From: Isurus oxyrinchus
Lineage: Eukaryota
NCBI GenBank assembly: GCA_026770705.1
Contig: JANJGN010000052.1
Location: 2,480,001 to 2,544,000, forward strand
Length of the DNA: 64,000 nucleotides
Direction of reading: 5' to 3'
Made by a program: the position numbers and the translations under genes. Positions 52,101-54,428 of the stretch are shown here, piece after piece. The notes beneath the pieces are model-generated. The model searched no databases. It saw only the letters and a program-made list of their open reading frames with translations, and was not told the DNA's origin. Position 1 is the stretch's first letter. Every line of letters starts with the position of its first letter.

Positions 52101-54428
52101 GACTGACCCTCTGACAGTGCAGCACGCCCTCAGTACTGACCCTCTGACAGTGCAGCACGCCCTCAATACTGAACTGAAGTGTCTGCCTGGATTACGGGCT
52201 ATGTGGTGAAAGAGCTTACATTGACATCACACCTTTCACATTCTCAGTGTCTTTCAAAGTGCTTCACAGTCAGTGTAAGTTAACTGATCTGTATTTGTTT
52301 TTAGATGCTCCACGGAATCTCTCAATTACTTCTCCAGATATGATTAACGCTTCATCGATCAATATAATTGAGGGGAATTCTGCAGTGATAATCTGCTCTG
52401 TCGAGAGCTTCCCAGCTTCTAACCTGATGTGGCGACATCTTAATGTCCCAATGAACAGAACAAGTTCCAACAATGAGCTGTGGTTGGTGATTCCTCACGT
52501 TACATCCAGGGATACTGGAGAATATCAGTGTGTGGCAGAGAATGAACATGGAGCAGTGGAGGGGTTCCTAACCATTACTGTGGAACGTGAGTGTACACAG
52601 ACTTTAATATTTCTCTCATCTCCGAACACATATACTCAGATGCTCTCCCACACACACACAAGCACTCACAAATGTACAGACCCAAAGTGCATGCACACAC
52701 ACAATCCCACACTCATGAGCACACAGAAAGACACACTCACACACAAACACAGTAGTACACACTTCCCTATGAGTTACCTGACCTCCCTCAGTACTGCACT
52801 GGAGAGTTCTCCTGGATTCTGGGATATGTGTTCCCATTCATATTTATCGAAGAATATCCAAATTACAAAGTCTATTCCAGAAACTCACATGCACAAAGAT
52901 TCCAACAGATACTCCCCACCTCTCCGTGTATCTCTCTCCTCCTTTAAGAAGCTTCCTAATCCCTAACTCTTGCCTGTCCTAACTCCTCCTTATAATGCCC
53001 TGTGTCAAATATTTTGTGTATCTGAGAGAAAGGGAGAGATAAGGAAGTTTAGGAAGGGATTTCCTGTTAGTGAAGAGCTTACTTCTTTTTCTCACCTTTC
53101 CAGTGTTCAGTTTTGCCATCATGTCCAATGACCCTGTTTATAATGGGGGCCTCCTATGTAAACGTCACACTGTCTTTACATCCTCCCACCAGTGGTGGCA
53201 CTGTGGTGCTTAACCTTGCACCTCCCAGCTTTTCAGCCAACGTCACTTCCCAATTTGCTACACATGCTGTAAGTTCATCAAAATTAACTTATATATCAAA
53301 TGGTAGATGTGATAATTCATTTTATTGAAAGGTTCATCCGCGCTCTGGGAAAGGTTTGCACTCTCCAGGAAGCAGGAATAGGCTGGATGTTGGGGAGTTC
53401 ATCTTTTCCCAGAGAGTAGGGATCCTCGGGAATGTGCTGTCAGTGGGTGTGGTGGTTGCTGTCTCTCTGTTGCCTTCAAGAGGGATCTGGAGTGGTTACT
53501 GACTGGGGGAGAGATCATGGAAGCAGAGAATGATACAGCACAGGAGGAGGCCATTCAGCCCATTGTGCATGTGCCAGGTCTTTCAATGTTCTATCCAATC
53601 AGATCCACTAACCACCACTCCACTTTGCCCCCATCTTCTTCCTTCAAGTGTTTATCCAATTTCCCTTTTGAAAGTTCCTATTGAATCTGCTTCCACCGCC
53701 CTTTCAGGCAGCACCTTCCAGATCACAACAACTCGCTCTGTCAAAACAAATTCTCCTCATCTCCCCCTCCAGTTCGTCAATCTGTGTCCCTCTGGTTACC
53801 GACCCTCCTGCCCCTTAAATACATCGATCCTGTTCACCTCAACCACTCCCTGTGGGAGCGAGTTCCACATTCTCCCCTCTCTCTGGGTAAAGATTGGAAC
53901 TGTTTATTAAGCGGGGGGTGTAAGTCCGTGGGGGAGTCCATCTCGATCCTGCCCGATTCGCACACGCGTCCGAGATGGATTTCCACCCTGCACTAAACGT
54001 TTCCAGAATTTTCTACAGCACAATCCTGTACACAGCGATGGAGAGAAACATTGGACAGGGAGTCCAACAGCACAATGATCCATTCTCACCAATGTTCCAC
54101 GCTAAGGGGAAAGTTCCGATTGTCCACTCTTAGAGTGTTTACAATGAAAACATTCATTCCACATTGAATCCCAGTGGATGGGTCAATATTACAGCAAATG
54201 TTGCAGTGATATGAAGCTTGATTGTTCAGCCAGAGTGAGAGATTGAAAGCAGAGAGTCAGTGATGATTTCTTTCTGTGTGTTCTCTAGACAGTGGAGGAG
54301 AGATTCTGCACGTGATCCTGATCCTGGGAATACGAGCTGTGATATTCCTTGTGGCTGTGGTTATCACTATCGCTGGAGTCTGTGTCTGGGAGAGACAAAC
54401 AGTGAAAGGAAGTCGACAGACTGTTTGA
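46122..54428 (+). CDS. Siglec-family (CD33/MAG/CD22-related) Ig receptor, 5 coding exons, 377 aa, V-C2-C2-TM(Arg)-short tail; predicted activating type
   Basis: join(46122-46167,47476-47844,49156-49452,52305-52586,54289-54428) = 1134 nt. All introns are GT-AG and phase 1, and the frame is open to TGA at 54426-54428. Orthology cannot be assigned by eye. Confidence 0.88.
46235..46500 (-). mobile_element. L2-clade LINE ORF2 C-terminal fragment with ~37-bp tandem expansion
   Basis: Repeats of GGAGGAGGTTACAGAGATAGGGAGGGTTGTAGGGGCT; reverse complement of the sequence type at 57950-58490. Confidence 0.65.
47476..47844 (+). CDS. Siglec-like gene 1, V-set Ig exon
   Basis: CCCCAG| acceptor and G|GTAAGT donor. 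CVQIPC (two Cys), C-strand VWF, GDCSL (E-strand Cys) and D.GPYFFR with the essential Arg (AGA 47781-47783) give the Siglec V-set signature. Confidence 0.95.
48130..48900 (-). mobile_element. Cluster of DeuSINE tails (~48130-48290, ~48495-48575) and a CR1 3' fragment (~48575-48900)
   Basis: CATTTCCATAGCGCCTTTCACCACCTCAGGACG SINE tail; AAAGAAGTTTCTCCTGAATTCCCC CR1 3' region. Confidence 0.6.
49156..49452 (+). CDS. Siglec-like gene 1, first C2-set Ig exon
   Basis: TTAG| acceptor (second in-frame CAG 9 nt downstream) and T|GTAAGT donor. SCTFNTTCNGTAAPVLTW has the extra Cys typical of Siglec domain 2; also SVLTLIPS..HHGHTLSC. Confidence 0.93.
49620..51353 (-). mobile_element. CR1 LINE, truncated and internally deleted (ORF2/RT remnants)
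   Basis: Minus-strand peptides NYRPVSLTSVVGKLL, QHGFVKGRSCLTNL, SGVPQGSVLG; (CATAGACT)n tail at 49620-49650; resumes briefly after the LTR at 51727. Confidence 0.92.
51354..51726 (-). mobile_element. Gypsy solo LTR inserted in the CR1
   Basis: TG..CA termini and a minus-strand AATAAA; homologous to 62878-63179, which abuts a PPT and integrase; CR1 sequence continues on both sides. No clean TSD visible. Confidence 0.75.
51765..52172 (+). repeat. 33-bp DeuSINE-derived minisatellite
   Basis: Same unit family as 3258-3685. Confidence 0.85.
52305..52586 (+). CDS. Siglec-like gene 1, second C2-set Ig exon
   Basis: TTTTTAG| acceptor and C|GTGAGT donor; (Y)APRNLSI..EGNSAVIICSVESFPASNLMW..DTGEYQCVAENEHG. 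Confidence 0.93.
53340..53890. mobile_element. Two tail-to-tail CR1 3' fragments (~53340-53530 plus, ~53535-53890 minus)
   Basis: TTTTCCCAGAGAGTAGGG..GCCTTCAAGAGGGATCTGG on plus; CAGGAGGAGGCCATTCAGCCC..GAATCTGCTTCCACCGCCCTTTCAGGCAG antisense tail. Confidence 0.6.
54289..54428 (+). CDS. Siglec-like gene 1, transmembrane/cytoplasmic terminal exon
   Basis: TTCTCTAG| acceptor. The phase-1 frame reads (H)SGGEILHVILILGIRAVIFLVAVVITIAGVCVWERQTVKGSRQTV*, with Arg codon CGA at 54333-54335 inside the hydrophobic stretch. Confidence 0.85.

What the first reader, a model, noticed from the sequence alone, without database searches (positions are those of the whole stretch)
54289..54428. Activating-type Siglec in a cartilaginous fish: transmembrane Arg and a tyrosine-free 12-aa tail, hidden from the ORF track
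Seen: splicing from the second C2 exon in phase 1 gives ILHVILILGI-R-AVIFLVAVVITIAGVCVW, then ERQTVKGSRQTV*, with no Tyr and so no ITIM/ITSM. The V domain keeps the sialic-acid-binding Arg (YFFR) and the Siglec cysteine pattern. Known: Siglecs with a basic TM residue and no ITIM (mammalian Siglec-14, -15, -16) signal through the ITAM adaptor DAP12, and an N-terminally placed TM Arg in LILRA/PIR-A-type receptors pairs with FcR-gamma. Inference: an intact three-Ig activating sialic-acid receptor with the Siglec-14 domain layout (not the two-Ig Siglec-15 layout) in a very early-branching jawed vertebrate, probably part of an expanded family.
Basis: partly seen in the sequence, partly recalled or inferred. 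Interest (0 to 1): 0.85.

Follow-up and report, generated by a model that had tools for sequence, protein, structure and literature searches.

The report
Shark activating-type Siglec-like receptor exon
This exon gives a shark Siglec-like immune receptor a membrane anchor with a buried arginine and a 12-residue tail without tyrosine, the usual build of an activating receptor that signals through a separate adaptor; the build is conserved in other sharks and already sits unremarked in public automatic annotation.

Summary
After a canonical acceptor, 54289 onward reads SGGEILHVILILGIRAVIFLVAVVITIAGVCVW-ERQTVKGSRQTV-stop, in phase with four intact upstream exons: signal, Siglec-type V domain with the YFFR arginine, and two C2 domains.

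Three corrections:
- **Exon extent.** The exon runs to 54450. It splices to a 3'UTR exon at 55164 that carries an AATAAA, so the stop lies 22 nt before the last junction.
- **Junction.** The proposed 52586-54289 junction was not seen. RNA contigs from two studies join a C2-1 exon directly to this exon, a two-Ig form. They come from a copy that is not identical to this gene.
- **Not a one-off.** The scan noted at least five other such exons in this genome. RefSeq models in Scyliorhinus torazame, S. canicula and Chiloscyllium carry the same cassette. VILILGIRA is invariant and all tails are short and tyrosine-free.

No ITIM-bearing exon lies downstream before the next gene. V-domain sequence, predicted fold and cysteine pattern place the protein in the Siglec family. 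It sits in an elasmobranch-specific clade and is not an orthologue of Siglec-14 or Siglec-15.

Adaptor coupling is inferred, not shown; the depth of the arginine slightly favours FcR-gamma. I rate it a new member of a known kind, of moderate interest. No paper describing shark activating Siglecs was found.

The parts
46122..46167 (+). Exon 1: ATG and signal peptide MGEVGLILIFISLLQ, phase 1, donor AAG|gtacaa
   Evidence: The junction SLLQ|VGLSQEWKG matches the homologues' MIGKSYFLLSLLQ|VGLSQEWKG.
47476..47844 (+). Exon 2: Siglec-type V-set domain; Cys21, Cys26, Cys84, Trp43, YFFR Arg102 (numbering of the exon translation)
   Evidence: Pfam V-set 2.5e-10 and Ig_CD22 8e-8. PDB Siglec-5 5.6e-15. 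AlphaFold pLDDT 89, and Foldseek top 47 hits are all Siglec V domains. RNA-contig loose end at 49155 equals the last 29 nt of this exon, but gene 2's V exon ends identically.
49156..49452 (+). Exon 3: first C2-set domain with three Cys (Siglec interdomain pattern)
   Evidence: Pfam C2-set_2 4.4e-9; sequence. 97.6% identical to gene 2's copy at 60680-60976.
52305..52586 (+). Exon 4: second C2/I-set domain, open and with good splice sites; inclusion in mRNA not shown
   Evidence: Pfam Ig_3 3.7e-12; splice sites. All RNA contigs on it carry 5 differences, so they come from other copies.
54289..54450 (+). Exon 5: stalk end, TM helix with Arg (CGA 54333-54335), 12-residue Tyr-free tail, TGA 54426-54428, 22 nt of 3'UTR, donor CTG|gtcagt
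   Evidence: RNA contigs of X4 and X5 cover 54287-54450 with 0 differences. Cassette homologues.
55164..55530 (+). Exon 6: 3'UTR exon, acceptor ccatcag|, AATAAA at 55501-55506; the 3' end is approximate
   Evidence: The loose end behind 54450 in X2 matches 55164-55193 with 1 mismatch. Sequence. X5's contig has 390 nt beyond 54450. Signal position.
56634..56711 (+). Orphan membrane-proximal cytoplasmic exon of the inhibitory-type relatives (GASTGRGHSAQAERVGSSSPGEQSDR), no Tyr; not joined to exon 5 in the contigs seen
   Evidence: tblastn 1e-14 to the great white P0001 tail.

Best explanation
Gene 1 of this window (46122-55530) is an intact member of a multi-copy, elasmobranch-specific Siglec-like receptor family. 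Its penultimate exon supplies the end of the stalk, a single TM helix with a conserved arginine about 18 residues above the cytoplasmic boundary, and a 12-residue tail without tyrosine. Translation stops 22 nt before the last splice junction, so no ITIM or ITSM can be made from this mRNA. The most likely mechanism has four steps. The V domain binds a sialylated ligand through the conserved F-strand Arg. The receptor cannot signal alone. The TM Arg pairs with the TM Asp pair of a dimeric ITAM adaptor, FcR-gamma somewhat more likely than DAP12 given the depth of the Arg. That pairing gives both surface expression and an activating Syk-type signal. Shown here: exon anatomy, family membership by sequence and fold, conservation of the cassette across shark orders, transcription and splicing of the cassette in RNA contigs with the stop intact, and absence of a detectable ITIM exon downstream. 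Inferred: sialic-acid binding, adaptor pairing, activating output, and that this particular copy is expressed as a three-Ig protein.
For: - Translation and anatomy.
- Siglec V domain: Pfam; PDB phmmer with YFFR aligned to Siglec-5; model pLDDT 89 with Siglec-only top fold matches; invariant C21, C26, W43, C84 in 28 relatives.
- Cassette conservation: S. torazame XP_072326180, XP_072325011 and a 987-aa model; S. canicula 272- and 273-aa proteins; Chiloscyllium punctatum and C. plagiosum. All have VILILGIRA, 21-24 of 29 TM residues identical to the window, and tails ERRTVKGSRQTV, ERQRVKGSRQTV, EGQTVKGS, ERRTV or ETNS, none with Tyr.
- RNA: contigs from two studies cover 54287-54450 without a difference. 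They are spliced at 54289 on one side. On the other side they leave the laid stretch at 54450, and the X2 overhang there matches 55164-55193.
- No ITIM exon between 54429 and 58940 with the tails of 17 relatives as queries.
- Position rule for adaptors: Arg at TM position 4 pairs with FcR-gamma, Lys at position 9 with DAP12 (PMC8102735). The CD89 Arg near the top of the TM tolerates one turn lower (PMC13107469).
- A scan note reports an FcR-gamma gene in this genome (not checked by me).
Against: - No binding or signalling data of any kind.
- The RNA contigs do not come from exactly this copy. Their C2-1 exon ends CAAG, against CTAT here and CAAT in gene 2, and carries G at 49401. All contigs on exon 4 differ at 5 places. 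Expression of this copy and use of exon 4 are therefore unproven.
- The hydrophobic run is 29 residues long, so the Arg is residue 11 of 29 counted from the outside, but about residue 5 of a 23-residue helix counted from the inside. The adaptor cannot be read from that.
- A 2014 survey found no FcR-gamma in sharks (PMC4016189).
- The runs are only guessed to be RNA by their record, though spliced joints at exact exon borders argue for RNA.
Confidence: 0.6

Rival explanations
1. The cassette type is functional, but this copy is silent, rarely used, or makes the two-Ig form by skipping exon 4. The RNA seen comes from paralogous two-Ig genes elsewhere in the genome.
For: The contig junction is C2-1 to TM, with a C2-1 end (CAAG) that neither window copy has. 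No contig carries this gene's T at 49401 or its exon 4 variants. Two different intron-plus-exon contigs, 1-1.7% from the window, occur in one sample. Scan notes list two-Ig TM-Arg genes elsewhere in this genome. S. canicula and S. torazame have two-Ig models with VQ-D/Y-SGGENLD junctions. The gene starts about 150 bp after a 34-kb satellite.
Against: All five coding exons are open with canonical, strong splice sites. The last base of exon 3 (T) gives the Tyr of the YAP motif typical of C2-1 to C2-2 junctions in relatives. Contigs drop rare variants and organism A may be another individual or a sister species, so absence is not shown. The TM exon matches 164/164.
Confidence: 0.25
2. The protein is a tail-less, non-signalling or decoy receptor. 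The TM Arg serves another purpose, such as ER retention or regulated surface delivery, oligomerisation, or pairing with a non-ITAM partner.
For: No adaptor interaction was tested. The hydrophobic run is unusually long (29 residues) and includes a His. Tail lengths vary from 4 to 12 residues among species.
Against: GIRA is invariant in all seven homologues across two shark orders while neighbouring TM positions vary. A lone basic TM residue plus a short tail is the established signature of adaptor-coupled receptors (PMC4701786; PMC8102735).
Confidence: 0.1
3. The short tail is one isoform only. Transcripts also splice around or from inside exon 5 to a Tyr-bearing inhibitory tail.
For: An orphan cytoplasmic exon of the inhibitory type lies at 56634-56711. 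The exon has a used donor at 54450.
Against: The used donor lies after the stop. The contigs join it to a UTR exon with AATAAA. The orphan exon needs a phase-2 partner, has no Tyr, and no matching TM exon or ITIM exon was found between 52586 and 58940. RefSeq models in other sharks end at the same stop.
Confidence: 0.04

Closest known systems
RefSeq shark models carrying the same cassette: S. torazame XP_072325011.1 ('CD33-like') and XP_072326180.1 ('Siglec-12'); S. canicula 272/273-aa 'Siglec-13' and 'Siglec-14 isoform X2'; Chiloscyllium punctatum XP_072409577.1
   Same: Same V and C2 domains (V 67-89% identical). Same TM cassette with VILILGIRA. Same or similar short Tyr-free tail, with KGSRQTV-stop identical in S. 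torazame.
   Different: Different species and different copies. Most clean models are two-Ig (C2-1 joined directly to the TM), whereas this gene also has an intact second C2 exon. The names are automatic, and no paper describing them was found.
Human Siglec-14 and Siglec-16 (activating partners of Siglec-5 and Siglec-11)
   Same: Siglec V domain with the essential Arg, C2 domains, a basic TM residue, a short tail without ITIM, and a neighbouring gene with a near-identical ectodomain exon (97.6% in C2-1). Paired-receptor logic with gene conversion: PMC4042635, PMC5701461.
   Different: Not orthologous: elasmobranch-only clade. The adaptor is unknown here, whereas DAP12 is used in humans. The neighbour's V exon carries a stop in this assembly.
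Siglec-15
   Same: Activating-type Siglec conserved in vertebrates, including fish, with a basic TM residue (PMC7226832).
   Different: Siglec-15 has Lys and a two-Ig layout. The V domain here scores 1.6e-6 to Siglec-15, against about 1e-14 to CD33-related Siglecs and MAG, so it is not a Siglec-15 orthologue.
KIR2DL4 and macaque activating KIR, CD89 (Arg near the top of the TM, FcR-gamma-coupled)
   Same: Arg rather than Lys, placed in the outer part of the membrane when counted from the cytoplasmic boundary (PMC8102735; PMC13107469).
   Different: Unrelated ectodomains. The Arg here may sit one to two turns deeper, depending on where the helix starts.

Membership tests
[quoted passage not shown] | N-terminal V-set domain homologous to Siglec V domains | tested here: met
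   Pfam V-set 2.5e-10 and Ig_CD22 8e-8. PDB phmmer best hits are Siglec-5, -8, -7, CD33, MAG and Siglec-10 at 1e-12 to 6e-15. Foldseek top 47 are all Siglec V domains, TM 0.80-0.88.
[quoted passage not shown] | Conserved F-strand arginine that binds the sialic acid carboxylate | tested here: met
   YFFR (Arg102 of the exon translation) aligns with YFFR of Siglec-5 and Siglec-8 in the HMMER alignments.
[quoted passage not shown] | Siglec cysteine pattern: no B-F disulfide, three Cys in the V domain, extra Cys in the first C2 domain | tested here: met
   Cys21, Cys26 and Cys84 are invariant in 28 relatives, with Phe in place of the F-strand Cys. The C2-1 exon has three Cys. Sequence level only; disulfides were not modelled.
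[quoted passage not shown] | Binds sialylated glycans | not testable with these tools
   Needs a glycan array or binding assay.
Activating, adaptor-coupled Siglecs (functional class of Siglec-14, -15, -16) | Basic residue inside the TM helix | tested here: met
   Arg at residue 11 of the 29-residue hydrophobic run, 18 residues from its cytoplasmic end. Invariant in seven homologues.
Activating, adaptor-coupled Siglecs (functional class of Siglec-14, -15, -16) | Short cytoplasmic tail without ITIM or ITSM | tested here: met
   ERQTVKGSRQTV then TGA, no Tyr. The stop is present in RNA contigs. No ITIM exon downstream.
Activating, adaptor-coupled Siglecs (functional class of Siglec-14, -15, -16) | Arg/Lys-dependent association with DAP12, DAP10 or FcR-gamma | not testable with these tools
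Siglec-14 (orthology) | Descent from the primate SIGLEC5/14 lineage, or at least from the CD33-related clade | tested here: not met
   V-domain tree: the window sequence lies in a 49-row shark and skate clade (SH-aLRT 99). Its nearest outside rows are shark MAG/SMP-like proteins (support 83). The clade that I take for tetrapod CD33-related Siglecs, from the tail of one member and with no row of it named, is separate. Deep nodes are weak (124 columns).
Siglec-14 (orthology) | Three-Ig layout in the mRNA | tested here: inconclusive
   The genomic exons allow it (377 codons). The only junction into the TM exon seen in RNA contigs is from C2-1, from a non-identical copy.
Siglec-15 (orthology) | Closest V-domain similarity to Siglec-15; TM Lys | tested here: not met
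   Siglec-15 scores 1.6e-6, against 5.6e-15 for Siglec-5. The TM residue is Arg.
Paired activating/inhibitory receptors | Adjacent inhibitory partner with a near-identical ectodomain and an intact reading frame | tested here: inconclusive
   Gene 2: V exon 87.8% and C2-1 exon 97.6% identical. Its V exon has TGA at the invariant Trp codon. Its TM and tail lie beyond the window (scan note).

The most novel reading that the evidence does not exclude
Exon 5 plus exon 6 form an old, portable 'activation cassette' (TM Arg, early stop, own UTR and polyA). In galeomorph sharks it has been copied or converted onto several Siglec-like genes of different Ig-domain number. This would create activating counterparts of ITIM-bearing receptors more than 150 million years before, and independently of, the mammalian Siglec-5/14 and -11/16 pairs, with signalling through a shark FcR-gamma that was long thought absent.
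Probability: 0.3. Interest if true: 0.65.

Novelty: new member of a known kind. Interest (0 to 1): 0.5.

Why it matters
Published surveys state that fish have only Siglec-1, CD22, MAG and Siglec-15 and lack CD33-related-type Siglecs (PMC7226832). A 2014 survey found no FcR-gamma in sharks (PMC4016189). A multi-copy shark family has Siglec V domains, ITIM-bearing members and conserved TM-Arg, tail-less members. That suggests an inhibitory/activating Siglec-like receptor system at the base of jawed vertebrates, or one that arose there in parallel. It offers a simple test system: receptor plus shark adaptor, Arg to Ala. The sequence itself is not new to databases. What is missing is any description or experiment.

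Tried and rejected
- **Relic tail in exon 6.** I tested whether exon 6 is a decayed cytoplasmic-tail exon, because the frame stays open for 105 codons after the junction. phmmer and blastx against all fetched relatives gave nothing significant, so I dropped the idea.
- **Inhibitory TM or ITIM exons downstream.** I looked with 16 full relatives and 17 tails. Only the Tyr-free orphan exon at 56634-56711 and a match over gene 2's leader turned up.
- **Cassette search by words in the large protein collection.** This found only Scyliorhinus proteins. The blank for other taxa means little, given the word index and the length limits.
- **The look-up of encoding contigs.** No DNA of the other sharks' loci could be compared, so there is no dN/dS and no check of their stop and donor.
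- **The search of earlier findings by sequence.** Blank.
- **Literature.** No paper was found with TYROBP plus elephant shark, and none on shark activating Siglecs.
- **Joined model.** The joined 377-residue model was never assembled, searched or folded.
- **Complex prediction.** Not used. No shark adaptor sequence was available by reference, and TM-only pairs are outside what that test resolves.
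Full report
**Observation**

The stretch 54289-54428 follows a canonical acceptor (ctgtgtgttctctag|AC). In the frame left by phase-1 upstream exons it reads SGGEILHVILILGIRAVIFLVAVVITIAGVCVWERQTVKGSRQTV, then TGA. The Arg codon is CGA at 54333-54335. The tail has no tyrosine. 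Hydropathy means for 19-residue windows reach 2.95.

**Gene model**

The upstream exons are all open, phase 1 and AG/GT-flanked:
- signal peptide, 46122-46167
- V domain, 47476-47844
- first C2 domain, 49156-49452
- second C2 domain, 52305-52586

Without exon 4 it would be 283 codons. Every search and the fold were done exon by exon, by reference.

**What the protein is**

- Pfam finds V-set and Ig_CD22 in exon 2, C2-set_2 in exon 3, and Ig_3/I-set in exon 4.
- Against solved structures the V exon hits Siglec-5 (5.6e-15), Siglec-8, Siglec-7, CD33, MAG and Siglec-10. Sialoadhesin scores 4e-10, Siglec-15 only 1.6e-6 and CD22 1e-3. YFFR aligns with the YFFR of Siglec-5 and Siglec-8, the sialic-acid-binding arginine.
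- A model built on 28 relatives has pLDDT 89.2. Its top 47 Foldseek matches in the PDB are all Siglec V domains.
- Cys21, Cys26, Trp43 and Cys84 are invariant in the relatives. The F-strand Cys of ordinary V domains is replaced by Phe, and the C2-1 exon has three Cys. This is the Siglec pattern.

All close relatives are elasmobranch proteins with automatic names such as 'Siglec-8/10/12/13' and 'MAG-like'. The best match is 88-89% to great white shark, and no 100% self hit was found.

In a V-domain tree the window sequence lies in a 49-row shark and skate clade (SH-aLRT 99). Its nearest outside rows are shark MAG/Schwann-cell-myelin-protein-like proteins (support 83). A separate 42-row clade holds a protein with a mammalian CD33-related-type tail, and I take it for the tetrapod CD33-related Siglecs, though I named no row of it. 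The protein is therefore a Siglec-family member, but not an orthologue of Siglec-14 or Siglec-15.

**RNA evidence**

The one run search found small runs (48-115 million letters) of 'organism A', from two studies, that hold 43-74% of the words of 54180-54530. I laid contigs of four of them on 49120-55100.

1. Contigs of X4 and X5 cover 54287-54450 with no difference, including the stop.
2. Contigs of X1, X4 and X5 join the end of a C2-1 exon directly to 54289. X2 shows the same as a loose end. Exon 4 is skipped in these molecules.
3. The contigs leave the genome at 54450, where the genome reads CTG|gtcagt. The 30-letter overhang matches 55164-55193 with one mismatch, right after an acceptor (ccatcag|). 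An AATAAA lies at 55501-55506. X5's contig has 390 letters beyond 54450, which fits an exon of about 370 nt plus tail.

So exon 5 is 54289-54450 and is not terminal. The stop lies 22 nt before the last junction, which is harmless for mRNA stability. The joints at exact exon borders argue that these runs are RNA, although their record only guesses so.

**Whose RNA is it?**

The contig's C2-1 exon ends ...CTAACTGTGCAAG. Gene 1 has ...ATGACTGTGCTAT and gene 2 (60680-60976) has ...CTAACTGTGCAAT. All runs read G at 49401, where gene 1 has T. Every contig on exon 4 differs from the window at five places. Two different unspliced contigs across 53698-54341, 1-1.7% from the window, occur in one sample.

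The RNA therefore comes from copies that are not this exact gene. They are either alleles of another individual or sister species, or, more likely, paralogous two-Ig genes. Scan notes report at least five other TM-Arg exons elsewhere in this genome, one followed up as a spliced two-domain gene. I did not check those notes.

The proposed 52586-54289 junction was not seen. Contigs cannot show absence, and exon 4 has strong splice sites. The T that ends exon 3 gives the Tyr of the YAP motif typical of C2-1 to C2-2 junctions in relatives. The three-Ig form remains the genomic default, but it is unproven.

**Conservation of the cassette**

Among the fetched proteins, seven carry the cassette:
- S. 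torazame XP_072326180.1, XP_072325011.1 and a 987-aa model
- two S. canicula proteins of 272 and 273 aa, the latter auto-named 'Siglec-14 isoform X2'
- Chiloscyllium punctatum XP_072409577.1
- C. plagiosum XP_043539248.1

VILILGIRA is invariant, and 21-24 of the 29 hydrophobic residues match the window. In six of them the protein ends in a short tail: ERRTVKGSRQTV, ERQRVKGSRQTV, EGQTVKGS, ERRTV or ETNS, all without Tyr. The C. plagiosum model instead reads on from the TM into a C2 domain and looks like a fused gene model, so it shows the TM only. The stop after KGSRQTV is shared with S. torazame.

The feature is therefore old, shared by Carcharhiniformes, Orectolobiformes and the window's species, and it is not a recent truncation. 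Most other relatives have a different TM exon (RRDSxxWxxGLL...) without a charge, and several of those have long tails with LLYANP/TEYAQI-type motifs. Two skate proteins have another short-tailed TM with a Lys near its start.

**Downstream of the gene**

tblastn with 16 relatives and with 17 tails found no ITIM-bearing exon between 54429 and 58940. It found one orphan, AG/GT-flanked exon at 56634-56711 encoding GASTGRGHSAQAERVGSSSPGEQSDR. This is the membrane-proximal tail exon of the inhibitory-type relatives, 78% identical to a great white model. It has no Tyr, needs a phase-2 partner and has no matching TM exon nearby.

**Mechanism**

A lone basic TM residue with a short tail is the accepted mark of receptors that pair with the TM Asp of dimeric ITAM adaptors (PMC4701786). 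Arg at TM position 4 goes with FcR-gamma, and Lys at position 9 with DAP12 (PMC8102735). The CD89 Arg tolerates being moved one turn lower (PMC13107469).

Here the Arg is 18 residues above the cytoplasmic Trp-Glu boundary, which places it in the outer part of a 21-23-residue helix. Counted from the Glu before the run, it is residue 11. I read this as a mild preference for FcR-gamma over DAP12, not as a determination. A scan note reports an FcR-gamma gene in this genome, against a 2014 survey that found none in sharks (PMC4016189).

**Novelty**

- The sequence type is already in RefSeq under automatic names, and the scan met it repeatedly in this genome.
- I found no paper that describes activating-type Siglecs or a CD33-like expansion in cartilaginous fish.
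- A fish survey states that fish have only Siglec-1, CD22, MAG and Siglec-15 (PMC7226832).

I rate it a new member of a known kind, of moderate interest.

**Limits**

- No adaptor sequence was available for a complex prediction.

Noticed in passing
window 58941-59306 (stop at 59069-59071): The V exon of the neighbouring gene 2 has an in-frame TGA exactly where gene 1 and all relatives have the invariant Trp codon (TGG). The presumed inhibitory partner is therefore broken in this assembly, unless this is an assembly or allele matter.
   Followed up: partly
window 56634-56711: Orphan AG/GT-flanked exon encoding GASTGRGHSAQAERVGSSSPGEQSDR, the membrane-proximal cytoplasmic exon of the inhibitory-type relatives. 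It lies between gene 1's polyA site and gene 2's leader, with no matching TM exon nearby.
   Followed up: partly
window 57759-57844: The C-terminal 27 residues of a great white RefSeq model (P0001) map here in another frame, over gene 2's leader exon (ATG at 57806). This suggests read-through or a merged gene model linking the orphan tail exon to the next gene's first exon.
   Followed up: no
window about 12000-45980: About 34 kb of GA-rich satellite (GC skew +0.88, with minus-strand ORFs full of SLSHTH repeats) ends roughly 150 bp upstream of gene 1's start codon.
   Followed up: no
window 59846-59959: An extra partial copy (first 114 nt, 97% identical) of the C2-1 exon lies between gene 2's V exon and its full C2-1 exon at 60680-60976.
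   Followed up: no
window 49664-51340 and 61188-62700, minus strand: The same reverse-transcriptase-bearing retroelement sits in the intron after the C2-1 exon in both genes. The tandem duplication, or later homogenisation, therefore postdates its insertion.
   Followed up: no
proteins P0016 and P0005 (Amblyraja radiata, Rhinoraja longicauda): Skate relatives have a different short-tailed TM (for example KTWKCLVALIVLAVILGVVPVIVWAACFRNK) with a Lys at its outer edge and no Tyr in the tail. This may be an independent activating-type solution.
   Followed up: no
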